From: Lytechinus pictus | Lineage: Eukaryota | Length of the DNA stretch: 64,000 nucleotides | Reading direction: 5' to 3' | NCBI RefSeq assembly: GCF_037042905.1 | Contig: NC_087250.1 | Coordinates: forward strand, 1,984,001-2,048,000 | Shown here: in pieces, positions 1 to 64,000 of the stretch | How the letters are laid out: each line of letters begins with the position of its first letter | Numbering within the stretch: the first letter of the stretch is position 1 | Made by a program: the position numbers and the translations under genes | Notes under the pieces: model-generated | Databases searched by the model: none | What the model was told of the DNA's origin: nothing | Seen by the model: only the letters and a program-made list of their open reading frames with translations

Positions 1-336
1 ATCAATCGCCTCATCAGCTCCATGAGACAGCGCTGTGAAGCCGTTATTGCTGCAGGAGGTGGTCACACTCGTTACTGAACTGCCTGAAAGACACTCAGAC
101 ATTCGTTTTTACCACTTCATGTCGGTAGCTGATACCCCTCGGGGCCCACTTTTCAGGATGTGCAGTGATGCGAGAGACATTGTGCAACAACTGAAACCAC
201 CCATGCGTGAAATTGATTACAGCGTGTTTAAGGACATTTAGGACAGTTGTACTGAGGTATTTCCAGAAATAAAACACCTTGTATAAAATCTTTATGTACG
301 TTTTAAAAAGTGGTCCTTAACTTTTTTTGAGTAGTG
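1..336 (+). mobile_element. 3' end of a Tc1-like DNA transposon (continues left of window)
   Basis: Frame 1, nt 1-78 reads INRLISSMRQRCEAVIAAGGGHTRY*, a typical Tc1 transposase C-terminus; ends ...CCTTAACTTTTTTTGAGTAGTG followed by TA (337-338). Confidence 0.85.
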
Positions 337-599
337 TATATCACAAGGTGGTTTTATGAACCAGTTTGGAAGATTGCTTCAACTGTTCTCATTACAGCTT
401 AAACTAGTTTCCGTTAAACTAGTTTCCATTAAACTAGTTTCCAGAAGGTAGTGAGAATGGTGTCACACTTAACTCTTTGTGAAACAACTCTCTGATGAAA
501 CTTACCATTTTGTTTAGCATTATCAAATGAAGGACCAGTAAACTGACCCGATTCATTTTGTTTTTTATGATCGAATGAAGGACCAGTGAACTGACCAGA

Positions 600-1033
600 T
601 CCAGTCGTAAGATATTTAGCAGATCGTTAAAATTAATGCTACTGGAAGAATATAATTAATTTGGGATGGTAAAATACTGCCTGAAAACAAATAATTCTAT
701 ATAAAGATTTTGTGAATAATTAAGATATTTTTTTCTTGTAAATAGTGTAAATATGTTCACTTAAAATTATCGAAATTTTCTGCAACATTAATAACTAGAA
801 TTAGTATTGAATTTGATGTACAATATTGAGATTTAGTTACATGTAGATTTATTGTTTAAACTACATGTATGATAATGATATTATTTGGGGCTAACCTCGA
901 TTAGCATCTTGCTATTATGTTAGCTCCAATTACCAAATGTTTTGTTTATACATGTATGTGATGTACTATTCCTTGTAATTGTACCTAACAGTGATATTTG
1001 GTAATAAATTCAATTCAATTCAATTCAATTCAA
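600..1033 (+). mobile_element. Probable 5'-truncated non-LTR retroelement 3' end inserted in the 49-bp array
   Basis: AT-rich segment with hairpin GGGGCTAAC...GTTAGCTCC (~887-928), then AATAAA and an (ATTCA)n tail; interrupts array copies. Confidence 0.5.
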
Positions 1034-4000
1034 TTTTGTTTTGTATGATAAAATGAAGGACCAATGAAAGTTACCCGCTTCATTTTGTTTTGTATGATCG
1101 TATGAAGGACCAATGAAACTTATACCCACTTCATTTTGTTTTGTATGATCGTATGAAGGACCAATGAAACTTACCTGCTTCATTTTGTTTTGTATGATCT
1201 TAAGAAGGACCAATGAAAGTTACCCGCTTCATTTTGTTTTGTATGATCGTACGAAGGACCAATGAAACTTACCCGCTTCATTTTGTTTTGTATGATCGTA
1301 CGAAGGACCAGTGAAACTTACCCGCTTCATTTTGTTTTGTATGATCGTACGAAGGACCAATGAAACTTACCCGCTTCATTTTGTTTTGTATGATCGTATG
1401 AAGGACCAATGAAAGTTACCCGCTTCATTTTGTTTTGTATGATCGTATGAAGGACCAATGAAACTTACCCGCTTCATTTTGTTTTGTATGATCTTAAGAA
1501 GGACCAATGAAAGTTACCAGCTTCATTTTGTTTTGTATGATCGTACGAAGGACCAATGAAACTTACCCGCTTCATTTTGTTTTGTATGATCTTAAGAAGG
1601 ACCAATGAAAGTTACCCGCTTCATTTTGTTTTGTATGATCGTACGAAGGACCAGTGAAACTTACCCGCTTCATTTTGTTTTGTATGATCGTACGAAGGAC
1701 CAATGAACTTAGCCGCTTCATTTTGTTTTGTATGATCTTAAGAAGGACCAATGAAACTTACCCGCTTCATTTTGTTTTGTATGATTAAGAAGGACCAATG
1801 AAACTTACCCGCTTCATTTTGTTTTGTATGATCGTACGAAGGACCAGTGAAACTTACCTGCTTCATTTTGTTTTGTATGATCGTACGAAGGACCAATGAA
1901 ACTTACCTGCTTCATTTTGTTTTGTATGATCTTAAGAAGGACCAATGAAACTTACCCGCTTCATTTTGTTTTGTATGATCTTAAGAAGGACCAATGAAAC
2001 TTACCCGCTTCATTTTGTTTTGTATGATCGTATGAAGGACCAATGAAACTTACCCGCTTCATTTTGTTTTGTATGATCGTACGAAGGACCAATGAACTTA
2101 GCCGCTTCATTTTGTTTTGTATGATCGTATGAAGGACCAATGAAACTTACCCGCTTCATTTTGTTTTGTATGATCTTAAGAAGGACCAGTGAAACTTACC
2201 CGCTTCATTTTGTTTTGTATGATCGTACGAAGGACCAATGAAACTTACCTGCTTCATTTTGTTTTGTATGATCTTAAGAAGGACCAATGAAAGTTACCAG
2301 CTTCATTTTGTTTTGTATGATCGTACGAAGGACCAATGAAAGTTACCCGCTTCATTTTGTTTTGTATGATCGTACGAAGGACCAGTGAAACTTACCCGCT
2401 TCATTTTGTTTTGTATGATCGTACGAAGGACCAGTGAAACTTACCCGCTTCATTTTGTTTTGTATGATCTTAAGAAGGACCAATGAAACTTACCCGCTTC
2501 ATTTTGTTTTGTATGATCGTACGAAGGACCAGTGAAACTTACCCGCTTCATTTTGTTTTGTATGATCGTACGAAGGACCAGTGAAACTTACCCGCTTCAT
2601 TTTGTTTTGTATGATCGTACGAAGGACCAGTGAAACTTACCCGCTTCATTTTGTTTTGTATGATCGTACGAAGGACCAGTGAAACTTACCCGCTTCATTT
2701 TGTTTTGTATGATCGTACGAAGGACCAGTGAAACTTACCCGCTTCATTTTGTTTTGTATGATCGTATGAAGGACCAATGAAACTTACCCGCTTCATTTTG
2801 TTTTGTATGATCGTACGAAGGACCAGTGAAACTTACCCGCTTCATTTTGTTTTGTATGATCGTACGAAGGACCAGTGAAACTTACCCGCTTCATTTTGTT
2901 TTGTATGATCGTATGAAGGACCAATGAAACTTACCCGCTTCATTTTGTTTTGTATGATCGTACGAAGGACCAATGAAACTTACCTGCTTCATTTTGTTTT
3001 GTATGATCGTACGAAGGACCAGTGAAACTTACCCGCTTCATTTTGTTTTGTATGATCGTATGAAGGACCAATGAAACTTACCCGCTTCATTTTGTTTTGT
3101 ATGATCGTACGAAGGACCAATGAAACTTACCTGCTTCATTTTGTTTTGTATGATCGTACGAAGGACCAGTGAAACTTACCCGCTTCATTTTGTTTTGTAT
3201 GATCGTACGAAGGACCAGTGAAACTTACCCGCTTCATTTTGTTTTGTATGATCGTATGAAGGACCAATGAAACTTACCCGCTTCATTTTGTTTTGTATGA
3301 TCGTACGAAGGACCAATGAAACTTACCCGCTTCATTTTGTTTTGTATGATCGTACGAAGGACCAGTGAAACTTACCCGCTTCATTTTGTTTTGTATGATC
3401 TTAAGAAGGACCAATGAAACTTACCTGCTTCATTTTGTTTTGTATGATCGTACGAAGGACCAATGAAACTTACCCGCTTCATTTTGTTTTGTATGATCGT
3501 ACGAAGGACCAGTGAAACTTACCCGCTTCATTTTGTTTTGTATGATCGTACGAAGGACCAGTGAAACTTACCCGCTTCATTTTGTTTTGTATGATCGTAC
3601 GAAGGACCAGTGAAACTTACCCGCTTCATTTTGTTTTGTATGATCGTACGAAGGACCAGTGAAACTTACCCGCTTCATTTTGTTTTGTATGATCGTATGA
3701 AGGACCAATGAAACTTACCCGCTTCATTTTGTTTTGTATGATCGTACGAAGGACCAATGAAACTTACCCGCTTCATTTTGTTTTGTATGATCGTACGAAG
3801 GACCAGTGAAACTTACCCGCTTCATTTTGTTTTGTATGATCGTATGAAGGACCAATGAAACTTACCCGCTTCATTTTGTTTTGTATGATCGTACGAAGGA
3901 CCAGTGAAACTTACCCGCTTCATTTTGTTTTGTATGATCGTATGAAGGACCAATGAAACTTACCCGCTTCATTTTGTTTTGTATGATCGTACGAAGGACC

Positions 4001-5370
4001 AGTGAAACTTACCCGCTTCATTTTGTTTTGTATGATCGTACGAAGGACCAGTGAAACTTACCCGCTTCATTTTGTTTTGTATGATCGTATGAAGGACCAA
4101 TGAAAGTTACCCGCTTCATTTTGTTTTGTATGATCTTAAGAAGGACCAATGAACTTAGCCGCTTCATTTTGTTTTGTATGATCGTACGAAGGACCAATGA
4201 AACTTACCCGCTTCATTTTGTTTTGTATGATCGTACGAAGGACCAGTGAAACTTACCTGCTTCATTTTGTTTTGTATGATCTTAAGAAGGACCAGTGAAA
4301 CTTACCCGCTTCATTTTGTTTTGTATGATCGTACGAAGGACCAGTGAAACTTACCCGCTTCATTTTGTTTTGTATGATCGTATGAAGGACCAATGAAACT
4401 TACCCGCTTCATTTTGTTTTGTATGATCGTACGAAGGACCAGTGAAACTTACCCGCTTCATTTTGTTTTGTATGATCGTATGAAGGACCAATGAAACTTA
4501 CCCGCTTCATTTTGTTTTGTATGATCGTACGAAGGACCAGTGAAACTTACCCGCTTCATTTTGTTTTGTATGATCGTACGAAGGACCAGTGAAACTTACC
4601 CGCTTCATTTTGTTTTGTATGATCGTACGAAGGACCAGTGAAACTTACCCGCTTCATTTTGTTTTGTATGATCGTACGAAGGACCAGTGAAACTTACCCG
4701 CTTCATTTTGTTTTGTATGATCTTAAGAAGGACCAGTGAAACTTACCCGCTTCATTTTGTTTTGTATGATCGTACGAAGGACCAATGAAACTTACCCGCT
4801 TCATTTTGTTTTGTATGATCGTACGAAGGACCAATGAACTTAGCCGCTTCATTTTGTTTTGTATGATCGTACGAAGGACCAGTGAAACTTACCTGCTTCA
4901 TTTTGTTTTGTATGATCGTACGAAGGACCAATGAAACTTACCCGCTTCATTTTGTTTTGTATGATCGTACGAAGGACCAGTGAAAGTTACCCGCTTCATT
5001 TTGTTTTGTATGATCGTACGAAGGACCAGTGAAAGTTACCCGCTTCATTTTGTTTTGTATGATCGTACGAAGGACCAGTGAAAGTTACCCGCTTCATTTT
5101 GTTTTGTATGATCGTACGAAGGACCAATGAAAGTTACCCGCTTCATTTTGTTTTGTATGATCGTACGAAGGACCAATGAAACTTACCTGCTTCATTTTGT
5201 TTTGTATGATCTTATGAAGGACCAATGAAACTTACCTGCTTCATTTTGTTTTGTATGATCGTATGAAGGACCAATGAAAGTTACCCGCTTCATTTTGTTT
5301 TGTATGATCGTACGAAGGACCAATGAAACTTACCTGCTTCATTTTGTTTTGTATGATCGTATGAAGGACC
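1033..5370 (-). repeat. 49-bp minisatellite, ~88 copies; unit = last 37 nt of exon 5334-5471 + first 12 nt of intron (contains the 5' splice site)
   Basis: Minus-strand unit GGTCCTTCGTACGATCATACAAAACAAAATGAAGCGG|GTAAGTTTCA(T/C)T; further degenerate copies at ~495-600. Confidence 0.97.
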
Positions 5371-5471
5371 GGTGGAAGGTGTCGCTGCTTCCCCCCTCCA
5401 TCTCACCCAATCAAAATCATCTCCATTAGAGTTCACCCATCCACACCAGCTGCTTTCGAAATCACAGTCAA
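5334..5471 (-). CDS. MAM O exon 1 (last exon in window)
   Basis: [45 protein letters not shown]; 138 nt, phase 1-1; donor GCAG|gtaagt. Confidence 0.9.
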
Positions 5472-8400
5472 CTACAAACAATTAAAGTAAGATAATTGTT
5501 ATTAATGGCCGAGTCAATTCCCTAATTGTATCTAGCAAAAGGCCGGAACAGGTACTCTGAATTTCACAATCAACTTACAAGTGTTAAGGCTCAAAAATTG
5601 TAATACTCATCCTTGCAGCAAGTTCACTAAATGTCATTAACTTTGGAATTCACAATCAACTGCCAAGTTTCAAGTTTAAGAAAGAAATGAAAAAGTTGAA
5701 GTTCTATCGAATGCTAAGTTCTCCCTGTCAAGTTCTCACTAATATAGAGTTCTCCTTAACATTCAGTTCTTCCTTATGTCAAATTCTTTCTAACGTAAAG
5801 TTCTTGCTATTTTCAAATTCACACAATCATCAAGTTCATTTATGTCAAATTCACCCTACGATTGAGTTCTCTCTATCTTCAACTGCACCCCTATGGTGAA
5901 GTTCTACCTCACATCAACTTCTTCTCTCAAGCTTACTCCACTGCCAGGTACATCTGTATTGCAAGTTCACTCAATGTCTGTATTAGCATCTCTCAAAATC
6001 ACAATAATTTATGAGAATTTAACAACAAATAATGAGAATTTATAAATAATTATCATAATTGAAGTTCCAAAAGGTAAAAAGCAGGTTCCCCTTAAATGGA
6101 CATACCCTCAATCTAATAGCGTCAAAATCTACTCTGTAACAATTAACTCCAAAGAATTTAAGGTTTAGAGAATATTCCAAAAATTAATTTAAAAAATAGT
6201 GAATAGAAAAGAAATAACAAATTGGCCTACTTTAAGATAATTTGCTCCTTTCATTCTTTTAAGGAAAAACTTTTCATAAAGAGTCTAAGGTTACTCACTA
6301 CATCGACCTGGTGTCATGGAAACCGAGTCTAAAGCAATATCACCTTCATCACCGTTGTAATAAGTACCAATGAATATCATCTCGTATCCGTTTTCAGTCA
6401 CCTCTACTTGCCCTGTTATCAGAAAAGTACATTTTTCATTCAATAATTGTATTGAAAAGTCCAAGTTTGATGGTAACATGAAGAGAGTGAATCTATGCTA
6501 GAGAATCAATATTCCTGTTTGCTGATGCATACATACAATTATGGATTAAAAAAGCATAAGCACAAATATGAAGAAAATTATGGAATTAATATCACATTTG
6601 AAGGTAACTCATTATAATGCAATAATTGATATTCATGTACATGTATAATATCTTGAACAGCACTAGCTTTAGACTTCTCATATGGCTCAAATCACCCGGG
6701 ATACAACAATATATTGTTACTGTAGTACCCACTAAGATAAGAAAAGATCAGATTAACTTTATCGACACCCTTTCTGGGTCTGAAAGTATAACCCACTAAA
6801 ATGATAAATAATGTTTTGTAAAAAAAATAGCAGAGAATACAATGATTGCCAAGAAACCAGATGTTTAGTACATGCTTCTAAGAATGTCATTTCTTTCAAA
6901 ATAAAGACTACAAATTCATTATGAGAAAGCTCACTTAATTTCTGCATGATTCATGAAAGGGCATATTTGTATGTATCAATACTGTCCTCATGAGTGTGGG
7001 CCAATGACAATAGTATCATTGGGTGATTTCAAGTTCAGTGTTGACCTTTTGGTGTTGGTGTTAGGTTAATTTTTACATGAGTACAACACTAAACATAAAA
7101 TGAAGATGGTCCTGAAAAGTCACTCACTGGTTGCTGAGATAACAATAATGTGATCTGGATCAGTTTTACAAACTCAGAATAGGTTTTGGAGCTAGGGGAA
7201 GCAATCCAAATTCCAACACTAACACCAACACCAACACCGGACTTGAAATCACCCAGTGTGTCTCTGAGCTACCTGGCTTCCACATCACATTTCATTGTGA
7301 CATTACGGCTAGTCATCATTAATACTCAACTCCTTTAAACCAAAATATAGAAAAAAATTCTTAACTCATGAATGCCGTATTTTTCTAAGTTAGTTCTGTT
7401 TTAGCATTTTTTTATGTTTACAACTGTTTGGGACTTGCCTTTGACAGGGCATTGGCCCTTGTCAAGTTCCACACATTTGTGTATCCTCTGTATTTTGTGT
7501 TATTCTATGTATAATCTGCCTATTTCATCATTTTAATTGTATGTATGGACTTTTTATGCAAATGTCATATAAAAATTGAATTGTAATACCAAGATTAAAC
7601 AATACTTAGCAACTCTTGTTAGCAGGATCTGGGATTTATCTAAGGGTGCAGGGGGAGGGGGCAGGGGACATGTTTATCTTACCTTCAATCCATTCATTGC
7701 CCTGGCTCCCATGGTATTGTGCTACGGTGATCTGAACAAAATCTTTGTTGCGGTACTACAGAGATATGAATAGGCAATACACATATATTTCATGAATTAA
7801 AGGGGAATCCAACCCAAATAAAAACTAACTTGTTTTTACAAGAAAGAGAAGAATCAGACAAGTTGATAGGTGAAAGTTTGAACAATATTGGACAAACAAC
7901 AAGAAAGTTATGAATTTTTAAAAGTTGTAAATATTGGTAATCACTATACCCATGGAGACTTCAAATTGGCCGCTTATGGGATGTCATAGTGATGTAAGGC
8001 AAGGACTACTCTTCTATGTACTCCAATACATATTATGGCTAAAATGTCATTTTTCCCAAAAGTTTTATTTCAAATTATATTTTCTTTCATAAGGACATAA
8101 AACAATATACTACCTGGGTTATATTTAGATTACTGCCCCAGGGGAATGGGTACTTAGGAGAAAACCACAAATCCCTGATAATAAAGTACATGGCCTATGG
8201 GAAAGTTGTCCTTGCCCCTTGTCATAATTTACTTACCCAGTCAAGATAAAATCACAATGTATTCTGAAGCAAAATATATAAATATATACAAAAAAGCATC
8301 TGATAAATCTTTCAATAGCTTTACCTGTTTATATCATTATAACATGTAATACACCAAACCCTATTTTTAGCATGTAGTATATTATGTTTCATATTATAAG

Positions 8401-38400: not shown

Positions 38401-41400
38401 AGGATGCCCTGCTCTTAATTTACCATGGCTTGAATGAAGAGATCATGAAATGAAGTCAATATGGACCAGACATGTGAAGACTCCCATGTCATGCACTCTT
38501 CCATCAAAATCTCATTCTAATGCCTGTATCACAGTTTTTCCTAATATACATTATATGCAATGCCCGGTAATCTCATGCCAAATGACAGTACGCTACCAAC
38601 AATCTCATGCCTTACTTGTCTTTCAACTTGGCATCTCTAACAGAGAAGTAAATTGGGGTTGGGCATCAAAGGGTTGAATATTTTCTGACATTGCCCAATA
38701 GTGAGTTCAAAGTATAAATCCTGGCATAACCCTTGTTTTCTTAGAAAAACAAATAAATCAACCTACCCCATTAACCCTAAAAAGACTGGGGGGCTGATTC
38801 AGCCCCCCCCCCTCGACATTTTTCGCGATAAATATGTAATGCGAAAAGCTGGCGCCGCGCCGTTCCATGACTATTTTTTTTCAAGTCTTGCGCAACTTTT
38901 GAGACCAAATTTGCGACGCCCGGGTACGTGGTTCCGAAATTACGCATTGTAAGTGCATGTCGACCCGAAATTGCTCAAAAACGTGAATTTGAGTACAAAT
39001 CCAATGCAAATTGTGTTTTTAGCCAAAATTCATAAATGTATCATTATTTTCAATTTTACTAATCAAACTCAATTAATTTCATCTTGTTTGTGGTCAAAAT
39101 AAAGTAGGGGACGATTTCCATTGAAAAAAAATAAAAAACAAAAAGTCAAAAAACATAGAAATACATAAGAAATTTAAAAAAAAATGAAATACATAAGAAA
39201 AGAATTGTGATATTGAATTTATTTTAAAGTACATTTGATCAGAATCCCTCAAAGAGTCTGTGAATAAAAAATTAGCAGTTTAGAGGCCTTATTTAGTTAA
39301 CTAGAGCAAATCTTTGATTTTACGCATAAATTAGCATAATTAATGAATTATGAGATTTTTCTGAAAATTTGATCCTACAGTCTTGGAGATTATGCCATGG
39401 GTAATACACGTGCCAATTTTCGTCACGATCGCGCAGTCGACGGCCGAGATCATAGGGGGGGCTGAATCAGCCCCCCCCCCCAGTCTTCTTAGGCATCGAA
39501 ATAGCCCAGTCTATTTAGGGTTAACTGTGTGTAAATGTTCCAATAACATATCTAATACAAAAAAATCCTGAAAATAGTAAAATTCCATTTCAATTCATTA
39601 TTTCTTTGTTAAACTTTCCTACCAAGATTGTATAAACTTTGCCAAGGCAGTGGTAAAAAGTATGATGAACAATATTGGAATGTAGGAACTTCCATGTGGG
39701 ACACCATATCTTATCATCTCCTCTTGTGTGATCATATGATGGACCTGATAAGAATGATAAACAATACTGGAGAGTAGGAACTTCCCTGTGGAACGCCATA
39801 TCTTACCATCTCCTCTTGTGTGATCATATGATGGGCCTGTGCCAGACGTTGAGGTTGAGCCCTGTCCTCTTCTCCAGTCAAAATCATCATCAGTGGACTG
39901 GACAAAGTCACATGTATCGCTTTCAAAGTCACAGCTTTGCGTCCCAGATGCTACAATGAAATAAAACAAAAGTCTGAAGGATTGTTGCAAAGTTCAAGTG
40001 TAATCAAATGTTCCCCAAATCAAATATAATAGGACATTGCAAGAGAGTTGAGAATTATGGTGGAGTAAAAATCAATTGAAGTACTTGCTTTTGATGTAAG
40101 TAATAAAAGTTTCTTGCTAAAAGTTGCTATGTCCCCATAAGTGTTGGGCATCTTAAAATTCAAAATAATTTCAAAGCAGCTTTTCTCTCCCAAATTGGTC
40201 AACCCGAGGATTAAAAGGGGAGACACACACTGAATAGGATGTCTGCTAAAAACTGGGCAGAAAGGGGATCAGATTTGAGTTGATGCACCAGAAACATGCA
40301 CTCTGTATTCACATTTCAATGAACCAACCTATTTTGTTTTGTATACCAAATAAAACTTCAACATTATTTGGTGTCTTAAACTCAGCGTCCTATATCAAGG
40401 CATTCTTCAGCATTCAATTTCAACGAGTGAATTCACATTGTCATTCCATGAAGTAATTGGGTTTCAAAGTCTCGCTGAAATGCTTAGTTTGGTGACGGAG
40501 GTAATATATATGTAAAGCATATACTAGTCCAATCTATTAGGTACTAAGTAAACACAGAGTATTCTCAGTATGGTGGTACAGTTGTATAAAATCCAATAAG
40601 ATGTACAGTTTTTACAACTTTGAAGCATATGATTATTATTTCAAATAGATTTCTCTTACTTAATCTTTGCAATGTGCAATATCGTTTTTTTTCATAAAAA
40701 GCCGGATAACGCAGCAAACATATAATAGTCATGTCATGATAAAGGCACCATGTCATGTGTGTTGTATATGAATGTTTACTTACGTGGTGGAGAAGTTGGA
40801 GGTGCTGGCGTTGTAGTTGGAACAACAGCTGCTTCTGGAGGATAGGCTAAAAATTTATCAAATAAAAAAACATTTGATATGATCACTGAAGGCATACACA
40901 TTAGTGTGACATCACATATGAACTTAATTTCTCAGTGTCTAATGTTACTGCTCAATGCAAAGAAATATTCATGTTTCATCACTTGTTGGAAAGTATTTTA
41001 TTTTATTACAGTGGATATCTGCACAATACAAATACAGATGACACAACATTTGCTCCTGCAACAATTGCTCTGGGCTTAATTTTTAAGATGTATGATTAGG
41101 ATTAGGGTTGCATTAAGGTTATGTTAGGTTTAGGGTTAGGTTTATTAGGGTAGGGTCTAGTGTTAAAACCAAGGTTGAAGGTCATTTGATTAGTATGTGG
41201 TATTTAGGGTGGAGCAATTGTTGTCGGAGCAAATGCCATGGAACACAAATACATGTATGAAATGCATGTATTCATTATCAATATTTTTTTCTCTTTTTTG
41301 CTTATAAATACTGGCCATTTTCATATAAGCATTTCACTATGTTTTCTTGAGCTGCTTGATTTTAATAGGTTTGCAATAAACATCATTGGCCCCAATGACA

Positions 41401-44400: not shown

Positions 44401-44775
44401 ACTATCTGATAACATGGTAGTCCACAAATTTTTACGGCCCTCCTCCCTTCCCTAAGTAACTCTTTTTTCTTAACCGTACTTACACTGTACCTACATTTGA
44501 TAGTGTTGTTTGACCACTCTGTGGTGGTTTAGTTGAACTACAAGATTGCTTTTTTGTCATCTCAGGTTGAATTGTACAATTTCTAGAATTTATCCCATTT
44601 TCTCTCTATTTGTACTCCACCTGTTTCTCCCCCTTTTCTTTCCTGTATCTGATAGTCTTGTGTGATCATTTAGAGGACCAGCTTGTGGTGTAGTACAGTA
44701 CTACCAGATTGTCTTTGTCAGTCAAGTTGATCTCTACCGTCAGCAGCATTAGCATTTTCCTTCTATCACCCCTCC

Positions 44776-44809
<34 letters not shown>

Positions 44810-47800
44810 GTCTGTTATTTTTATCTTATAGTGCCTTAACCATACCAACCTGTATCTGAGAGTGTTGTGTGATCATTTAGAGGACCAGTTTGTGGTGTAG
44901 TACAGTACTACCAGATTGTCTTTGTCAGTCAAGTTGATCTCTACCGTCAGCAGCATTAGCATTTTCCTTCTATCACCCCTCCCTCTCTCTCTCTCTGTCT
45001 GTTATTTTTATCTTATAGTGCCTTAACCATACCAACCTGTATCTGAGAGTGTTGTGTGATCATTTAGAGGACCAGTTTGTGGTGTAGTAGTACTTCCTGA
45101 TTGTCTTTGCCAGTCAAGTTGATCTCTACCGTTGGCAGCATTAACCCACCCACAGAAATCAGACTCAAAATCACAATCCTCTGAAATATAATAAAAAAAT
45201 AAATATCATAATGTTGGCAAGGCACCGTGAAAAGAGTCAGAGCTACATCTTTCAGGCAGGTTTCTACAAATATTAAGTCATCACTAAAATTCAACATGGC
45301 ATAGGAAAGGTGAATGCAGGAAAAGTAACTGTTAAAGAAACAAACTTCACATTGCACATTTATAGCAAGACGTACTGCCAAGGGAAGTTGAACAGAATTT
45401 TGTAAACTTACCCACTAATTAAGTTAAGAGGTACAAATGTTAATCATGCCTTTTTCTAAATAGGCACAACTATTAAGATCATATATTTTCATGGTATGAT
45501 GAATAATGTATAAATCATCTTCACAACAGTCTATTCCATAAACTGCACTATTTTGTTCAAACAAACCTGTTTTTCACATAATTCATGAGCAACATAAAAA
45601 TCCCAAACACAAAGGAAAGCTTGTTCAAGTGGGAGTAAGATCCAATAAACTTTTTTGATTAAGGGATGGACAAGAGGCCATAACAGATATTTGAATTTAA
45701 TAAAAGGATCAACACAAGCTTTCGGCCATAATGTACAAACAAATTTGTGGAATATGTATATATATATATATATATATATAGATATATAAACTTTGTTGGA
45801 ACTATAACGCATTACCTCTTTGTCTCTTTTATCTCATCTGTGTCCAACACACGGAATGTAATATCGTTATATATATTATCTACATATATATATGCAAGAG
45901 GTTGGAGAATGTTACCCCAACATACAATATATGAGCATTATCCACTCCACATAGCAATCATAATTTAATATCGATCCTAGAATAGAATTCAATTTCACAA
46001 TCAAGAAAGTTGTTTCATTCAGAAGGTTCAGCTAGTCCCTCCAACATAAAGCTTATCAATTAATCATGGACTCCCTTGCATTGACACATACATGCAATGT
46101 ATTGTTAAAATGAATATGTGCAATCGATTGCTATTTTTGTGATACTGGCCCCTGAAATGATTTCCCCAGACTGCAAAAGAAACAAAAAGGAAACGTACCA
46201 CAACTTGTTCTTGTCATTGTTATCTCATCAATCGCTATATCTCTCTGGAGACCACTGCCGAGTAATCCATCAAACACCAGATCATATTCTGGTAGACTGA
46301 TTTGAACAGCGCCCTCGTGCCATTTGTTCCCTTGATCATATAGATGATTTGTGAGGAATTCGTACCTGTTATTACCATAGAGGGCCTACAGCAATACACA
46401 TCGAAGATGTACAAAAAAGATTTGATTTTATTGATTTGATTTATTGATTTCCGTTTCACAATTGTACATAATTATAATATAACATAACAAGGTCGAAAAT
46501 ACTGCAAGACATAATAAAATATATATAACATAATCTTAGATTTAAGGAACACAATTCAATAAATAAAGTTACCTAAGATGACATTTGTATTTAAAAGTAA
46601 AATGGAGGGTCTTGCCGAAAAAAGGCAAAGCTTGTACAAAAGGCAAGCCCCTAACTTAGTTTCATTACAAAATTACAACAAAAAAATATTGGGTCGCAAT
46701 GATATATAGAACTTTTGTTTAAAAATAAATACAAACAATTTATGTGTACTTTACAAAAAAAGTAACTGATTGATCGTGTGAGAAATATTTTGTTTTATAA
46801 CATTAGGGAGAGAGGGGGGAGGTGAGGTGGAGAAGAGAGGAGGGACAGAAAAGTGCAGTGTACATTACGTAGAAAGAACGCTATAAGATATAATATGATA
46901 TTATAAGGAAATGAAATATGATAACAATAATTTTTTTTTTTTTTTTATTCCAGAGAAGAAAAAAAACTTTGTCATTATATGTCTGTATATAGCCATATTA
47001 TTTGGTATCCACAAAGTAAAATTCATAAATATTATTCTTATACTTCATACTGTCTAATTTCGAAATATTAAAATAAAAATAAAAATTAATTTTTTTTTTA
47101 CACCAGACTTCTTGTCAGTCCCACATTTTATGCTTGAGTGAACCTCAAACTTCCATCATTGTTTTCTCATTACTCTTGGAAGCTCTCACTGAATAAATTA
47201 CTTGTATGGCTTAGTTGATAACATTTGACAAGTTATTTATCATTTTAAAGCTTGGGATGTTCTTTTTCACGCTCTATTAATTTCTTTAAAAAATCTTTTT
47301 GGGTGATTTGTTAGTTTTGAGTTTGCAGGTCACAAATTGAATCAAGTTTCATGCTCACCCCTAATTCTAAAACATAGACATCATCTCCATACATATGATA
47401 GTTATATCTCCAGCAATGGACCTCATCTGGGTTATTAATGGAGATGTGTGGTGATATTAATCTAGCTCTATTGGATGCGGTTCCCTCCGATCCAATGTAC
47501 AGATAATGCCCTGTGGATGAAACACATAACATTTTATCTCAACTTTAAATTAAGATTTTATCAATAATAACGTGAACATGTGTAATGCGCCGGTATCAGT
47601 CTTAAAAAGATGATAAAGGCACAACAAAGAAAAGAAAAGAAAAGAAGAAGAAAATAAAAATAAAAACTAAAAAGAGGGAACAACAGTAATTACTTGTTCA
47701 GTTCACAGCCCACTTGATACTCAAATCATTTAAATCTGCCTGGAAATAATAACTTGAATAGTTTGCCTCACCATTGATAGATTAGGAATTATCACAACAA

Positions 47801-56800: not shown

Positions 56801-59800
56801 TGTACAAAGTGAAAAACAGATTTACTTACGTTCACCATACATGTGATACCAGAATTGAAAACAGCCACCCTGGGTAGGAGGTTGTGGTTCACTGACAAAC
56901 CATGCTCTACGACCCTCAGCCTCGAAGCCTACAGGGAACAGCATGTACCATCCTATATACACACAAAGAATGAAACAGACAAAGAACAATATAAATCATA
57001 TCAATTAAGACATATGACAAACAATTTTTGTTGAGGGCGTTGCATGGTTCAAAGTCTTATTCGCCATAAGGCCAAGGTTTTAATACCACAGCAGCACTTG
57101 CAAATCATGTTGCCAACACAAAATTTGGATATCAGTAAAAATTTATGTTATTTATGCGTTTTCTTAGCTAATTAATCTCGTTAAATCTACCAATTTTATT
57201 TTAATAATTTAGTCATGCTAATTTATGCATGTATTTAGAATTGGGTGTTAACCTGTAGCCCCTGAAGTAAATGCTTCTATCTAGAGACCCTTTTATGGAA
57301 TTTCTATCAAATATACATTAAACATAATTGTTGGAATTAAAATTTGCCACATTGCCTAATTCACCTTTAATAAAGACGAAAATACAATTACAACAACGTG
57401 ATTGAATCAATATACCTTGGTATCTTCCGGTGGTATGGTCCACATCTGGTCCTGTGTTACTGGTATCAGTACCTCCTTGGTTTCTATACCAATTCAAATC
57501 ATCACCACCGTACACATTATCCCATAGACACGTATCATCTTCAAAGTCACAGAAACCTTCAGGGAAAAAAGAAAAGAAAAAAAATATACACATAAACTAA
57601 ACATACCATCCCCTCAGTGGTTTCCTAATTCTAAATAAAACTTTATTTATTCAAAAATAAAATACTGGTTTCATTTATTTGTTTTGTTTCGTTTATATAT
57701 CATGAATTTTTTCTCTCTGCATGTTTGTTCACAATACATGTATATGATTGCAGTCAATATCTAAAGGGGAGTTCTTGCGATGGGATAAAAAAAATCCTTC
57801 AAAATTTTATACACATTTAGATGTATCAACTCTACTTCACTACTGTTTCTTTAAATATCATACATAGTATATGCCTGAAAACTTTTGAGATTCTGGACTA
57901 TAAGATTCATATTGGGCATAATATGCCTATGTTCAAACTCAACTATCTTTCAATGTGAATGTGAACAGTATTGGTTTCCCTAAAATAACATCATTAATTC
58001 CTTACATTGGCAATGCTAGGAACATCACCGTTAACAAATGCATACTGGCCCATGTTAAGTGTTTAACTCCAAAAATGCTCCCTAACCAATGTTTATTTGT
58101 ATCTGATACATGAGTCATAAACTGTAAAATGAAAAATGCCGCCAAGAAACTAAAACTGGAGCAAATAAAACAACAAATGCTAAGTTAAGACTGTGTTTTT
58201 CAGAATGTTAAAAAAGTGTTAAAAATATTTGCTGGGAAGCATTTCATGACAATAAATATTCAATAATCTTCACTCACTGATTATTATAGGCAACTGAAAG
58301 CCTAGCATCTGATTGGATAAGGGCGCAATAGTCAGTGAAAACCATTGACTAAATGCTCCCACTTTGACCTACCTTGTGCCACGCATGGCCCTATTTCTAG
58401 ATTGATATCATCAATTGCAATTTCTCCATCTTCACCATCTAAAGTGGGTCCAATCACAGCCTCAAAAGCAACCTGAAAATCAGAAGAAAATCAGAAATTT
58501 ATGATTTTATTAACAAATAAAATATACTGTTGGCAATCTCACCTTCAATTACAAAGGTCAATCAAGCAGCTGTCACTTTGGTACATTGATCAAACAATTG
58601 ATGATTTTATCACTTATTATTGATCAATGCAACAATCATTATTAACTAATGTAATTCTTCTGGCAGTTTCATCTGCATTACAAAATTCCATGAACACAAG
58701 ATTGTTCACTTAGTAACATTGATCAAGTATTATTAATTTTTTTCTTTCTCATTTACTCTTTGAATATGTAATTTGATCATCCAAGACCAACCAGGGTGAA
58801 ACAAAATCGGAATTCATTACAATGTCAAGATTGCTCATCTCTTATACTGAAAGGAGCAGACTTTCATGTCACTCTCTCACCACTTGAGTTCAAACTGATG
58901 AAAGTCATATTATTATTATTATCATACCAGGACCATCTAGCTGCTGAAGAGCATTATTTTTCAAGGGACAAGATTACTCAACTTTTACCAAGAGAGTAGA
59001 ACAAGCCTTCAGTGTCATTGGATGATTTCAAGTTTTGTGTTGGCGTTGGTACAATGTTAGTGTTGGTTTTAGGAGTAAAAGTTGGATTGTGTTTTCAATT
59101 AACACCCCTTGTGAGTAAATAAAAATGATCAAACTCCCATCACTGATAGTTCTATGCATTTTGAGATATGTTTCATGACCAGTGACATATTAAGTTTGGT
59201 GCTATGCTGCATAAAAAGTGTCTTGAAACCAAAAGGTCAACATAAAACAACACACCCTCTACTAATGCACTCCACATCATCGGCCTGGGATCATCCTGGA
59301 ACTGCTGAAGAGGATTATTTGTCAAGGTACAAGATTACTTGATTCTTACCTTGAATGTTGAAGTAGCCTTCAGTGTGACCCTATCCATCATCCAATCATT
59401 GAAGAGTCCACCAGGTTGTGTCTCCCAGTACGGTCCTATCAAGGTATTACCATCATGTTCCTAAACCTTCAGAGTTCTCAATCCTTTATGGTGATACCAG
59501 AAAGTCTTACCTTGAAAGAAGAAGTAGCCTTCAGTGTGACCCTATCAATCATCCAATCATTGAAGAGTCCACCAGGTTGTGTCTCCCAGTACGGTCCTAT
59601 CAAGGTATTACCAACACGCTCCCAGACCCTCAGAGTACTCAATCCTTTATGGTGATACCAGAAAGTCTTACCTTGAAAGAAGAAGTAGCCTTCAGTGTGA
59701 CCCTATCCATCATCCAATCATTGAAGAGTCCACCAGGTTGTGTCTCCCAGTACGGTCCTATCAAGGTATTACCAACACGCTCCCAGACCCTGAGAGTACT

Positions 59801-62800
59801 CAATCCTTTATGGTGATACCAGAAAGTCTTACCTTGAATGTTGAAGTAGCCTTCAGTGTGACCCTATCCATCATCCAATCATTGAAGAGTCCACCAGGTT
59901 GTGTCTCCCAGTATGGTCCTATCAAGGTATTACCAACACGCTCCCAGACCCTGAGAGTGCTCAATTCTTTATGGTGATACCAGAAAGTCTTACCTTGAAA
60001 GAAGAAGTAGCCTTCAGTGTGACCCTATCCATCATCCAATCATTGAAGAGTCCACCAGGTTGTGTCTCCCAGTACGGTCCTATCAAGGTATTACCAACAC
60101 GTTCCCACACCCTGAGAGTGCTCAATCCTTTATGATGATACCAGAAAGTCATACAGTCACCCTCAGACGTTGCGGGGATATCTTTGGAGTACAGGATTGC
60201 TCGATCTTCTTCACTAACCATCTCAGAGTGGTTTGCATAGATGAAGTAACCTTTGAATGGTAGAAATGCAATGTTTTGATGATCATTGCTAGGTAGGTTG
60301 GCAACGTACTCAAAAAGCAATTGATTATCAGTGCATATTTTTATTATAAATGCTTTTGAGGCATATTCATTAAATTAGCACATCAATGATATGGTTCTCA
60401 TCCAGCAACCAGCGAGCAAACCTAAGAAAAGTTTACTTTCAACCAAGTATGGTTTATTCACTGATCCTAGCAGGCAATAGGGTGAACTAGATTCAGTTTA
60501 AAAATATAAAAATTGGAATTTAGAAGGTAATACATTTAACATACTGGTTCATGACTTTTAACTAAGCCATGACATACCACAAATACATTTATAATGGTCG
60601 AATATGTTCAAGATCACAACTAAAATTCTAATATTACACACTATACATTGATATGACAAAGAGAGTACAGATAATGGGAGGAAAAAGGGAGGACAAAATG
60701 GAGGACAAAATGTAAAATTGCAAAACATAAACATTTTTTTTCCATTGCATCAATTGTAACCACTGTAGATTAGTATTTTGTGTTAATCGTCTTTTTGTGA
60801 GTTTGTTTTATCTTCTGTTCGTGTTGTAGTGGTGTTTTTTATGTCATACTTTTGGTTATGTTAATACATTAAAATGTCATATTTTTGGGGTTGCGCTATA
60901 CCCCGGTTATGCCGCCAGGACGACAGTGAACCGACAGGTATTACCGTACCTCTTTTTCTTTTTCGGTTTAATGGATCGTCCTGTCGGCAGGACTAGGGTA
61001 CAAGTTATTTGTAAATTATTCTGAGTACACAGTTTTTTTTAGGATATGTTGTATGTACTTATACACAGTTTGTATCAATGTTCTGTTTGATTGAAGTGCA
61101 ACCATATGTTTTGTATACTTTGATTGTTTTTGTGACGAATAAAAACTGCAAAGATAAAAAAAAAAATGGAGGACAAGATAAGAGACTTCTGAGACGGTGG
61201 CTCACCATTAGGTGTTCCAAGGCTGTGATCAGGAAGATTCATTCCCGGTCGAGGATAGTCAAACCCTGTACCTCTTGACCAATCAAAATCATCTAGGACA
61301 GTCTCCTGCATCCAACCGCACATATCATAACGGAAGTCACATTTCCCTTCAGATTGAACAAAAGAAAAAGTATTTAACTATCACAAATACATAATGAAAA
61401 CTTATTTAATCTCTCATTTACAGTTTAATATTGTGTTTATTCAGGAGAATTCAAATTCTATCCTTGTTTTATTTTCCTTGAAGCGCCATGAGCACCGAAA
61501 GGTGGACCTCTGCACTATATAAGTAGCCACCATTATTATTATTATTTATAATTACTAGTCATTTAGAACAGTTTCATGTATAAAACCACACATGTTATTT
61601 TGAAAGTTAAATTCCCAATGAGATTGAACGATGGGGATTCTGACATTGCAATGCATAATGAATTTGATACAACTTTATTATGTGTGGGCGCGTCTTGGTT
61701 TAGTGGTTCTGACTCTCCCCTTTAAAACAGAGGGTCATGGGTTTAAATCCTAGCCGTGGCGTGTTTTCCTTCAGCAACAAATTTATCCACATTGTGCTGC
61801 ACTCGACCCAGCAGAGGTGAATGGGTACCCGGCAGGATTATTTCCTTGAATGCACTGAGCGCCGGTGATGGCAGCTCGAGCTAAAGCCGGGGTAATAATA
61901 GCAGTGCTTTGTATCCTAAGGCAAAAAGCGCTTTTTAAATCCAGCTAGTATTATTATTACTATTGAGATGAAAAAAATTAGGAAAAGAATAACCACACAT
62001 TAATAATCACACATTAATAACCAAACATAACAGAGAAAGATAAGTCCGGGATATAAATTATTATTTTCAATGCAGGACAGTAGTATAATATAATTTTTTT
62101 TACCCATATTTTATATAAATGTGATAAGGCTTACTTGTTGCTGGGCAGGGTCCAAGGTAGGCTGTGATATCATCGATTGCCATGTCACTGAAAATATTAT
62201 CACCAATCGTCCCTTCTATTTGGAACTAAGACAAAACAAGAGAAAAACATACATAAACTCTGAGATTTTAACATTATTCTCAGATCAGTCAAGATATTGC
62301 CACATATTGCTCCTTCTGTTTAAATCAATACTCGACAAATCACCAAGCAAACAGTGAGAAATTGTGAAACACCACATCATTTACAACTGAAAATATGCTT
62401 CAAAAGTTACTCAAAAATATGAAAGAATTTGAACAATTTTCATTCTAGTTTATTGTTATTCTATCACAAAAATAGGATAATCATATCAAAACAGGAGCAT
62501 AAAATTTGTAAAAGTTCAAATTATTTGCTCCTTATTCATAATGGTGTGGATGCCTACAGATTAACAGGGAGGGGGGTTATGCTGTTTCATATTTGCAAGA
62601 GAAAACAAGAAATAAATGTAGCATTCAAGGGGTTTCAAGAACAAAAATTAAAAGAGCCAAGAGGGAAATGTCCTACCCTGTAAATAATATTAGCATAAAA
62701 AAATATTGAAAATAAGCTAAAAGTAATGTCATGTAAATTATAGTACCTCAAAAAGATCCTTAGGTGGGTAAAAGTCAATGTTTGCAATCTGCCAGAAATC

Positions 62801-63844: not shown

Positions 63845-64000
63845 CTATGAATAATCAATGGACAAAGTCACATGACAGGGGTTTGAATGTGTAGTCAGGT
63901 GATGCCTCAGGTGGATAGACTATGAATAATCAATGGACAAAGTCACATGACAGGGGTTTGAATGTGTAGTCAGGTGATGCCTCAGGTGGATAGACTATGA
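63788..64000 (-). repeat. 75-bp tandem repeat (>=3 copies, runs off window) spanning the acceptor of exon 63671-63844
   Basis: CATAG|TCTATCCACCTGAG... junctions at 63844, 63919 and 63994; copies identical. Confidence 0.95.

What the first reader, a model, noticed from the sequence alone, without database searches (positions are those of the whole stretch)
1033..5370. 4.3-kb array of ~88 near-perfect 5' splice sites behind one exon
Seen: each 49-bp unit re-creates [13 protein letters not shown]|GTAAGT. Most copies keep GTAAGT; a minority have GTAACT or GCTAAGT. Read-through gives ...[17 protein letters not shown], so only the first donor is productive. Degenerate copies at 495-600 (donor at 505/506 followed by unique intron) probably mark the original intron start. 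Inference: an extreme case of proximal donor choice by exon definition, or a U1 snRNP sink; use of any downstream donor would give a truncated, NMD-targeted MAM transcript.
Basis: partly seen in the sequence, partly recalled or inferred. Interest (0 to 1): 0.8.

Follow-up and report, generated by a model that had tools for sequence, protein, structure and literature searches.

The report
Splice-donor minisatellite in urchin MAM gene
One intron of a giant sea-urchin MAM-domain gene starts with 88 tandem copies of the preceding exon's tail plus its splice signal; the array is real and unusually large, but it belongs to a known kind of repeat in which the first, genuine signal is normally the one used.

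Summary
Window 1033-5370 is a 49-bp minisatellite of 88.6 units on the coding (minus) strand. Each unit is the last 36 nt of a MAM-domain exon (5471-5334) plus the first 13 nt of its intron. Seventy units keep G|GTAAGT (12 match CAG|GTAAGT at 9/9, 58 at 8/9). Thirteen have GTAACT and five have a broken donor. Using any donor after the first would include a TGA stop.

The sister species Lytechinus variegatus has the same array at the same junction, with 48-bp units and only 11 copies. Its gene model joins ...KQNEAG directly to the next exon, which is the first-donor junction. The exon shows 4 synonymous and 1 non-synonymous change between the species, so it is still under purifying selection.

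This is a known class: human F7, IFI6, CBS, LMNB2 and PDGFA junction minisatellites, and amphioxus "mirages". The scan already noted at least four others elsewhere in this genome, and this gene alone carries at least five. My best reading is a fast-evolving, probably neutral VNTR with silent pseudo-donors; the "U1 sink" idea has no support. The residual interest lies in the record copy number, pseudo-donors stronger than the gene's real donors, and an excess of arrays at exon boundaries.

The parts
5334..5471 (-). MAM-domain 'A' exon (138 nt, phase 1/1) encoding [45 protein letters not shown]+G. Its last 36 nt are the exonic part of the repeat unit.
   Evidence: Pfam MAM PF00629 profile positions 1-45, E 3e-8. 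Best-scoring A exon in the window's own profile map, E 1e-24. Peptide present in L. pictus model P0262 and, with one substitution, in L. variegatus model P0259. 5/138 nt differ from L. variegatus, 4 of them synonymous.
5328..5336 (-). Authentic 5' splice site CAG|GTAAGT (cut between 5334 and 5333), a 9/9 match to the U1-complementary consensus.
   Evidence: Sequence. It is the strongest candidate donor in the window: other exons score 5-8 of 9, mean 6.4, even taking the best nearby GT.
1033..5370 (-). 49-bp minisatellite, 88.6 units. Unit = GTCCTTCRTACGATCATACAAAACAAAATGAAGCRG | GTAAGTTTCAYTG (36 nt exon tail + 13 nt intron head). 23 unit variants; the centre is homogenised, and weak or broken donors cluster at both ends.
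   Evidence: TRF; unit listing and donor census; variant map PwPPwwwwSPoSSS...SwSwSwSSSwP?w?. No copy elsewhere in the window except 506-600. No Rfam family.
1007..1035 (.). (AATTC)n microsatellite abutting the truncated last unit of the array.
   Evidence: TRF; sequence.
601..1006 (.). AT-rich spacer of about 400 bp between the young 49-bp array and the old 48-bp units. It is lineage-specific, with no counterpart in the L. variegatus intron.
   Evidence: No BLAST match in L001 or elsewhere in the window.
506..600 (-). Two diverged 48-bp units, remnants of the ancestral 48-bp array, ending in G|GTAAGT at 506/505.
   Evidence: TRF period 48, 2 copies, 85%. They align column by column with the last two L. 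variegatus units.
459..505 (-). Start of the unique intron sequence, orthologous to the sequence that follows the L. variegatus array.
   Evidence: BLASTN: window 507-459 versus L001 36711-36759, 86% over 49 nt, E 9e-12; alignment A1.
6300..6420 (-). Preceding 'C' exon, the end of the previous MAM domain (...[18 protein letters not shown]).
   Evidence: Pfam MAM positions 119-158; matches P0259/P0262/P0256.
39658..39839 (-). Sister case: 92 bp x 2 duplication of another A-exon tail plus donor. The second donor is mutated GT->AT.
   Evidence: TRF; sequence. The orthologous array in L. variegatus is 91 bp x 4.4.
44593..45143 (-). Sister case: 187 bp x 3 duplication of an A-exon tail plus donor.
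   Evidence: TRF; sequence; repeated HSPs at the orthologous L. variegatus site.
59344..60154 (-). Sister case: 161 bp x 5 (154 nt of a B-exon tail + GTAAGAC).
   Evidence: TRF; sequence. The orthologous array in L. variegatus is 149 bp x 2.7.
63788..64000 (-). Sister case at a 3' splice site: 75 bp x >=2.8 (acceptor plus start of an A exon), cut by the window edge.
   Evidence: TRF; sequence. The orthologous array in L. variegatus is 75 bp x 3.5.

Best explanation
This is a junction-anchored intronic minisatellite, of the type called a 'mirage' in amphioxus and exemplified by the F7 intron 7 VNTR in humans.

Proposed history:
1. Before L. pictus and L. variegatus split, a 48-bp segment spanning the last ~35 nt of a MAM-domain exon and the first ~13 nt of its intron was tandemly duplicated.
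2. The array has since evolved by slippage, unequal exchange and conversion.
3. In the L. pictus lineage a variant with one extra base (49 bp) expanded to about 88 copies next to the exon. Two old 48-bp units were stranded behind a lineage-specific spacer.

Proposed behaviour: each unit carries a copy of the 5' splice site, but the spliceosome uses the first, authentic donor (CAG|GTAAGT at 5334/5333). The reason is either that it is transcribed and committed first, or that it pairs with the upstream acceptor across a 138-nt exon. The other sites stay silent as pseudo-sites inside an intron of more than 5.3 kb. Occasional use of a later donor would add 49n nt containing a TGA and would probably be removed by nonsense-mediated decay. 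The array itself is most likely a neutral or slightly costly by-product, not a device.

Shown: the anatomy; the orthology and the copy-number and period change; the stop codon after any later donor; purifying selection on the exon.

Inferred: which donor is used; NMD of mis-spliced products; neutrality.
For: - Structure of the array and its derivation from the exon/intron junction.
- MAM exon identity.
- Orthologous array in L. variegatus at the same junction: 48 bp x 11, with orthologous distal flank.
- Species-specific unit variants fixed across each array, meaning concerted evolution. Diverged, donor-weakened units at both array edges with a homogenised centre. The globin paper describes the same turnover signature for mirages (PMC3087553).
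- The L. variegatus model P0259 reads ...KQNEAG|YYLLFDTS... into a B exon 1.65 kb downstream. The L. pictus model P0262 also leaves the exon after KQNEAG.
- The exon has 4 synonymous and 1 non-synonymous change at 96.4% identity, against 90% identity in the adjacent intron. So the exon has remained functional for as long as the array has existed.
- Experimental precedent: in F7 minigenes only the most upstream functional donor is used, regardless of repeat number (1-12 units), and in LMNB2 and PDGFA only the authentic donor is used (PMC1557585). Amphioxus mirages do not disturb splicing (PMC3087553, PMC3902484).
- Four more junction arrays in the same gene, and at least four in other genes of this genome, behave alike.
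Against: - No transcript evidence was reachable. The gene models may rest on homology and ORF preservation rather than on reads, and P0262 is chimeric downstream of this exon.
- In F7, pseudo-sites that match the consensus perfectly did compete, being used at 70-90%. Here 11 downstream sites are perfect and 58 are 8/9, stronger than any other donor of the gene. Some leakage is therefore plausible.
- In IFI6 and CBS the two nearest pseudo-sites are used as well.
- An old S. purpuratus model (P0256) joins the preceding C exon directly to the following B exon, with no A exon. Exon skipping, which is in frame at 138 nt, is therefore not excluded.
- The copy number rests on one assembly.
Confidence: 0.75

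Rival explanations
1. The array is a functional element. One version is a bank of U1 snRNP binding sites that strengthens definition of the 138-nt exon or protects the long intron from premature cleavage and polyadenylation (telescripting). Another is a rheostat that diverts part of the transcripts to PTC-containing, NMD-degraded products and so tunes expression.
For: An array has been kept at this junction in two species. 70 of 88 units keep a strong donor, stronger than the gene's real donors. The 48->49 nt period change turns an in-frame decoy (L. variegatus: the second donor would add 16 residues) into a stop-containing one. U1-dependent telescripting and unproductive splicing are established phenomena (own knowledge, not tested here).
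Against: Copy number differs 8-fold and the period differs between sister species. Donors decay at both array edges, as in neutral minisatellite turnover. High unit identity is explained by recent homogenisation, so it needs no selection. The same kind of array occurs at many unrelated junctions of this gene and genome, with 2-36 copies. In F7, adding or removing units had no effect on splicing. As a cell-wide 'sink', 88 sites on one pre-mRNA are negligible against the abundance of U1 (own knowledge).
Confidence: 0.1
2. The array has disabled this exon. The donors compete so strongly that the exon is skipped (in frame) or mis-spliced, so this MAM domain is defective or dying in L. pictus.
For: The S. 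purpuratus model P0256 lacks the orthologous A exon. Perfect pseudo-sites compete in F7 minigenes. The exon is symmetric (phase 1/1), so skipping would keep the frame.
Against: The exon ORF is intact and is the best match to the A-exon profile in the window. 4 of its 5 substitutions against L. variegatus are synonymous, and it is more conserved than the flanking intron. Both Lytechinus models include it. P0256 is an old model with obvious duplication artefacts.
Confidence: 0.07
3. The copy number (88) is an assembly artefact. A shorter real array was inflated, or haplotypes were concatenated.
For: Minisatellites are hard to assemble. The L. pictus protein model in nr looks as if it was built on an assembly that broke at this point. 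No reads are available here.
Against: 23 unit variants occur in a non-periodic order with edge-to-centre structure, which is not what a collapsed or duplicated assembly produces. An independent assembly of the sister species has an array at the same place, plus a 36-copy array two introns on. There are no N runs in the window.
Confidence: 0.08

Closest known systems
Human F7 intron 7 37-bp VNTR (Borensztajn et al. 2006, PMC1557585)
   Same: The first unit spans the exon/intron boundary. The authentic donor is followed by identical pseudo-donors. Copy number is polymorphic. Only the most upstream donor is used.
   Different: F7 has 5-9 units against 88. The F7 unit holds 4 exon nt + 33 intron nt, against 36 + 13 here. 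F7 donors are weak (TGG|GTGGGT, consensus value 74), while here they are perfect or near-perfect. In the F7 system, perfect pseudo-sites did compete.
Human IFI6 (6-16), CBS intron 13, LMNB2 and PDGFA junction minisatellites (as summarised in PMC1557585)
   Same: Minisatellites that reiterate the exon/intron junction: 25 pseudo-sites (IFI6), 15-20 units (CBS), 10-15 x 100 bp (LMNB2), 16-18 x 81 bp (PDGFA).
   Different: All are smaller. In IFI6 and CBS the two nearest pseudo-sites are used and give isoforms. Here any such use would meet a stop codon.
Amphioxus 'mirages' (Canestro et al. 2002, cited in PMC3087553; also PMC3902484)
   Same: Minisatellite-like tandem duplications of exon/intron boundaries in an invertebrate deuterostome, at both 5' and 3' boundaries. 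They occur several per genome, are length-unstable, show concerted evolution with divergent edge units, and do not disturb normal splicing. Their mechanism of origin is unknown.
   Different: Reported mirages have a few units (for example 3-6 in the globin gene BflGb6), against 88 here. I found no echinoderm report in the searchable library.
Other junction minisatellites noted by this scan in the same genome (VPS13 x13, a transporter gene ~35 x 42 bp, an R3HDM-type gene, a kringle gene)
   Same: Same design (exon tail plus donor, repeated into the intron) and same organism.
   Different: This is the largest so far. It is one of at least five in a single gene, and here an orthologous array in a second species was examined.

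Membership tests
Junction-anchored minisatellite ('mirage' / F7-type VNTR) | Head-to-tail tandem repeats with a minisatellite-sized unit | tested here: met
   TRF: period 49, 88.6 copies, 95% matches.
Junction-anchored minisatellite ('mirage' / F7-type VNTR) | The first unit spans a genuine exon/intron boundary (unit = exon tail + intron head) | tested here: met
   The exon is a MAM A exon present in orthologue and conspecific protein models that end it at KQNEAG. The unit is 36 nt of exon plus 13 nt of intron.
Junction-anchored minisatellite ('mirage' / F7-type VNTR) | Units reiterate the splice signal | tested here: met
   70 units with G|GTAAGT, 13 with GTAACT, 5 broken.
Junction-anchored minisatellite ('mirage' / F7-type VNTR) | Length instability and concerted evolution | tested here: met
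   88 x 49 bp in L. pictus against 11 x 48 bp in L. variegatus at the orthologous site. Species-specific variants are fixed across units, and edge units are divergent. Polymorphism within the species could not be tested.
Junction-anchored minisatellite ('mirage' / F7-type VNTR) | Normal splicing uses the authentic site and the copies are silent | tested here: inconclusive
   Only indirect evidence: gene models P0259 and P0262 use the first-donor junction, and the exon is under purifying selection. No RNA data were reachable.
MAM domain (PF00629) exon of a MALRD1-like multi-MAM protein | Significant match to the Pfam MAM profile, within a regular A-B-C exon series | tested here: met
   34.1 bits (cut-off 26.4), profile positions 1-45. 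About 16 MAM units lie in A-B-C order on the minus strand. Relatives are named 'MAM and LDL-receptor class A domain-containing protein 1/2-like'.
Recursive splice site (ratchet point) array | A 3' splice site (polypyrimidine tract + AG) directly abutting the GTAAGT | tested here: not met
   The sequence upstream of each donor is purine-rich (ACAAAACAAAATGAAGCRG|GT) and has no pyrimidine tract.
Dispersed satellite or transposon-derived array | Copies of the unit at other loci | tested here: not met
   The only other matches in the window are the old units at 506-600. In L. variegatus the unit occurs only at the orthologous junction. A genome-wide search was not possible.
Structured or known RNA gene cluster (snoRNA/miRNA) in an intron | Match to an RNA family or a distinctive conserved fold | tested here: not met
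   No Rfam match at E<=1. There is only a short AU-rich hairpin of -5 to -8 kcal/mol, equally present in authentic and pseudo sites and in both species.
U1 snRNP sink / telescripting element | Measurable U1 occupancy, with an effect on polyadenylation or U1 availability | not testable with these tools
   Sequence complementarity to U1 is high, but occupancy and effect need experiments.

The most novel reading that the evidence does not exclude
Junction-anchored minisatellites are not random accidents in sea urchins. In this gene, tandem arrays with units of 40 bp or more include an exon boundary far more often than random placement predicts: 5 of 9 in the window against 1.2 expected, and 8 of 17 with the first L. 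variegatus locus against 1.7 expected. Seven of the eight are donors, and all five testable ones have persisted since before the two Lytechinus species split. That would imply either a mutational mechanism tied to 5' splice-site sequence or co-transcriptional splicing, or preferential retention because the selected first unit keeps re-seeding the array. The 88-copy array, whose decoys are stronger than every real donor of the gene, would then be a natural stress test of first-come donor commitment.
Probability: 0.25. Interest if true: 0.6.

Novelty: new member of a known kind. Interest (0 to 1): 0.35.

Why it matters
By itself the array is a large example of a described kind of repeat, so it does not change what is known about splicing. 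It is still useful in three ways.

1. It is an extreme natural substrate for the old question of how one 5' splice site is chosen among identical competitors. There are 70 strong sites, 12 of them perfect, at a fixed 49-nt spacing, in a species that can be injected and made transgenic. The sister species supplies an 11-copy, in-frame version as a built-in control.

2. Together with the other cases in this gene and genome, it extends amphioxus-type "mirages" to echinoderms. It also gives a measurable excess at exon boundaries, mostly donors, for a phenomenon whose mechanism of origin the literature calls unclear.

3. There is a practical point. Such arrays coincide with broken or chimeric gene models: the L. 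pictus nr model and the split L. variegatus models. Annotators of urchin genomes should expect them.

Tried and rejected
1. I searched the 90%-identity protein collection with the exon's 63-aa open frame, hoping for genomic or transcript fragments of this species. It returned nothing.

2. I tried three routes to this locus's own annotated product: a representative search with the exon, a long relative P0002 limited to its best word-sharing region, and P0256 region 672-920. No protein is 100% identical to the window. The closest are L. pictus nr models at about 93-100% per exon, of which P0262 covers the exon but is chimeric downstream.

3. I tried to fetch the S. purpuratus locus through P0088 and P0256. 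Neither product is on record, so the age of the array beyond Lytechinus and the apparent absence of the A exon in P0256 remain open.

4. I tested whether weak donors are concentrated next to the exon, as selection against proximal decoys would predict. Five of the first 7 pseudo-sites are weak (hypergeometric P 0.005), but the distal end shows the same enrichment. I attribute the pattern to edge divergence, not selection.

5. I tested whether a local RNA hairpin masks the pseudo-donors. The hairpin exists but is the same at the authentic site and in L. variegatus, so I rejected it as an explanation.

6. Rfam scan of 1-6600 found no family.

7. Recursive splicing is rejected because there is no pyrimidine tract before the donors.

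8. The 54-bp array at 30542-31742 looked like another junction case, but it begins 14 nt inside the intron and is not derived from the junction.

9. The original mirage paper (PMC117041) is not held, so it is cited only through PMC3087553.

10. A search for papers on competing or duplicated 5' splice sites found nothing with my terms.
Full report
OBSERVATION. Tandem Repeats Finder reports one array at 1033-5370: period 49, 88.6 copies, 95% matches, score 7769. It also reports a separate two-copy, 48-bp array at 506-600. The window contains no N. On the minus strand I obtained 88 anchored units: 81 of 49 nt, four of 48, one of 47, one of 51, and a truncated last one. The donor census is 58 CGG|GTAAGT, 12 CAG|GTAAGT, 11 CGG|GTAACT, 2 CTG|GTAACT, 4 GGCTAAGT (GT lost) and 1 GTATAAGT. 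I correct only the exon limits: the acceptor AG is at 5473-5472 and the exon runs 5471-5334 (138 nt, phase 1 at both ends).

GENE CONTEXT. The whole window is one gene on the minus strand. The open frame through the exon matches Pfam MAM (PF00629) at profile positions 1-45, E 3e-8. Neighbouring frames match positions 41-131 and 119/131-158. Profiles built from the window's own copies map about 16 MAM units in regular A-B-C exon order. The exon of interest is the best-scoring A exon (E 1e-24). Relatives in the databases are giant 'MAM and LDL-receptor class A domain-containing protein 1/2-like' proteins of many invertebrates. L. pictus proteins from nr match the window's exons at about 93-100%. 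L. variegatus proteins match at about 87-100%, and S. purpuratus at 65-89% in collinear order. The rest of this MAM domain (B and C exons) lies beyond the left edge of the window.

ANATOMY. The unit is GTCCTTCRTACGATCATACAAAACAAAATGAAGCRG | GTAAGTTTCAYTG, that is 36 nt of exon tail plus 13 nt of intron head. Because 49 is not a multiple of 3, read-through changes frame and meets TGA 41-43 nt after the first donor (...[19 protein letters not shown]). Every later donor is therefore behind a stop. There are 23 unit variants. The donor map along the array is PwPPwwwwSPoSSSSSSSSSSSPSowSSS...SSSwwPSSoSSSPPSSoSwSwSwSSSwP?w? (P perfect, S 8/9, w GTAACT, o GT lost). The centre is homogeneous and both edges are divergent. 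The array ends in mid-unit against an (AATTC)n run (1007-1035). It is followed by about 400 bp of AT-rich sequence with no match elsewhere. Next come the two 48-bp units (600-506), which end in CAAAATG|GTAAGTTTCAT, and then unique intron. The + strand at 1-77 reads like the C-terminus of a Tc1-type transposase (from reading the sequence; not tested).

ORTHOLOGUE. The representative search returned a short S. purpuratus model (P0088) collinear with window 24.7-10.1 kb. Its cluster led to P0256, and a search with P0256 found the L. variegatus model P0259. P0259 contains ...[71 protein letters not shown].... Its genomic locus (L001, GCA_018143015.1 CM031020.1) shows:
- the same exon at 36096-36233;
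- 11 units of 48 bp at 36194-36720, all with GGTAAGT;
- then unique intron;
- the B exon at 37882, giving an intron of 1.65 kb.
The last L. variegatus units and the following intron align with window 600-459 (86% over the unique 49 nt, E 9e-12). In L. variegatus the 48-nt period keeps read-through open. The second donor would add 16 residues in frame, and a 47-nt third unit then shifts the frame.

SELECTION AND DONOR STRENGTH. The exon differs from its L. variegatus orthologue at 5 of 138 positions: 4 synonymous and 1 N->H. The adjacent intron is 90% identical and six other exons average 94.7%. The exon has therefore stayed under purifying selection with the array behind it, which argues that productive splicing works. 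The authentic L. pictus donor is CAG|GTAAGT, where L. variegatus has CGG|GTAAGT (a synonymous A/G at position -2). Candidate donors of 40 other exons match the 9-nt consensus at 5-8 positions (mean 6.4, none 9/9) even when the best nearby GT is chosen. So the pseudo-donors are stronger than the gene's ordinary donors.

NOT A ONE-OFF. The same gene carries four more boundary-spanning duplications in the window:
- 92 bp x 2 (second donor GT->AT);
- 187 bp x 3;
- 161 bp x 5 (154 nt of exon + GTAAGAC);
- 75 bp x >=2.8 at an acceptor.
All four have orthologous arrays in L. variegatus with other copy numbers or periods: 91 x 4.4, about 3 copies, 149 x 2.7 and 75 x 3.5. L. variegatus also has 47 bp x 36 (exon tail + GTGAGTTCACATC) two introns downstream of the array studied here, 87 bp x 2.9, and 156 bp x 2.8. 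Among TRF arrays with units of at least 40 bp, 5 of 9 in the window include an exon boundary against 1.18 expected from random placement of one unit (P 0.002). In L001 it is 3 of 8 against 0.53 (P 0.012), and combined it is 8 of 17 against 1.7 (P 6e-5). Three caveats apply. The locus was chosen after the fact, one pair is orthologous, and the exon maps come from tblastn. Seven of the eight are donors. Two of four arrays that do not touch a junction are shared between the species, against five of five junction arrays, which is too few to compare. Earlier notes of this scan describe the same design in at least four other genes of this genome.

WHAT IS KNOWN. Borensztajn et al. 2006 (PMC1557585) describe the class:
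- F7 intron 7: 37 bp x 5-9;
- IFI6/6-16: 25 pseudo-sites, the two nearest also used;
- CBS intron 13: 15-20 units, two pseudo-sites used;
- LMNB2: 100 bp x 10-15;
- PDGFA: 81 bp x 16-18.
In F7 minigenes the most upstream functional donor is always chosen, independent of unit number (1-12), and pseudo-sites compete only when they match the consensus perfectly. In amphioxus such boundary duplications are called 'mirages'. They occur at 5' and 3' boundaries of several genes, are unstable, show concerted evolution with divergent edge units, do not disturb splicing, and have no known mechanism of origin (PMC3087553, PMC3902484). I found no echinoderm report.

MECHANISM. My best reading (0.75) is a neutral or slightly costly junction minisatellite whose first donor is used, with the later copies as silent pseudo-sites. 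Rare use of a later copy would give a stop-containing transcript that is expected to be degraded. That expectation is an inference from the general rule that a stop well upstream of the last exon junction triggers NMD.

The rivals are:
- a functional U1-recruiting or unproductive-splicing element (0.10), weakened by the unconserved copy number and period, the edge decay, and the many sister arrays;
- an exon crippled by its decoys (0.07), weakened by the substitution pattern;
- inflated copy number from assembly (0.08, not exclusive of the main reading).
A cell-wide 'U1 sink' is implausible on abundance grounds (own knowledge). Rfam, RNA folding and a recursive-splicing reading gave nothing.

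VERDICT. This is a new and very large member of a known kind. What remains interesting is the size and strength of the decoy array, the two-species natural experiment (49 nt x 88 with a stop versus 48 nt x 11 in frame), and the apparent excess of such arrays at splice donors in sea-urchin genes.

Noticed in passing
L001:39128-40823 (L. variegatus): A second large donor-carrying minisatellite two introns downstream of the orthologous array. It is 47 bp x 36, and each unit is the exon tail ...CAAGGTCAGATACCATTCAAAGGGAGTAACATG plus GTGAGTTCACATC. The gene model uses the first donor. The L. pictus counterpart lies outside the window.
   Followed up: partly
window 39658-39839: 92-bp x 2 duplication of an A-exon tail plus donor. 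The second copy's donor is GT->AT, so the decoy is dead. L. variegatus has 4.4 copies at the same site.
   Followed up: partly
window 59344-60154 and 63788-64000: 161-bp x 5 copies of a B-exon tail plus GTAAGAC, and 75-bp x >=2.8 copies of a 3' splice site plus the start of an A exon. Both are shared with L. variegatus at other copy numbers or periods (149 x 2.7; 75 x 3.5).
   Followed up: partly
window 52732-52821 versus 56828-56980; L002:32483-32917: A diverged extra copy of the B-exon end (…[14 protein letters not shown]) lies 4 kb downstream of the real B exon in L. pictus. At the orthologous place L. variegatus has a compact 156-bp x 2.8 array of exon end plus GTAAGT. The L. pictus copies may have been separated by an insertion.
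   Followed up: no
P0256 residues 780-800 (S. purpuratus, old model): The model joins ...[10 protein letters not shown] directly to GHYLLFDTS..., so it has no counterpart of the A exon that precedes the array. This could be real skipping or loss, or an assembly gap. The model also contains obvious duplicated segments.
   Followed up: partly
P0262 residues 546-633 (L. pictus nr model): The model joins this exon (KQNEAG) to a B exon nearly identical to window 56953-56828, which lies upstream in the gene. That join is impossible on this assembly, so the model is probably chimeric and comes from an older assembly that broke at the array.
   Followed up: partly
L001 and L002 called genes: In L. variegatus, what looks like one giant multi-MAM gene is annotated as a head-to-tail series of separate models on one strand (451, 957, 593, 1545 and 1077 aa). 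At least one break (L001 1481-3001) contains a tandem array next to a donor.
   Followed up: no
window 30542-31742: 54-bp x 22 array (GGTGGTGGTAAAAATGATGATGA...) that begins 14 nt after an A-exon donor but is not derived from the junction. It is shared with L. variegatus (51 bp x 6).
   Followed up: partly
window 1-400 (+) and 11183-11938 (-): Tc1/mariner-type transposon remnants inside introns. 1-77 reads ...RLISSMRQRCEAVIAAGGGHTRY*. The ORF at 11414-11938 has a weak HTH_Tnp_Tc3_2 hit (E 0.004).
   Followed up: no
window 1033-5370, each unit: In the sense RNA each donor sits in the loop of a short hairpin (AAUGAAGC/GUUUCAUU, -5 to -8 kcal/mol). The hairpin is the same at the authentic site, and a comparable one exists in L. 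variegatus, so it does not discriminate between sites.
   Followed up: yes
window 23404-23600 and 42207-42469: Two purely intronic arrays or insertions are L. pictus-specific. 49 bp x 4 is single-copy in L. variegatus, and the segment holding the 45-bp x 1.9 repeat is absent there.
   Followed up: partly
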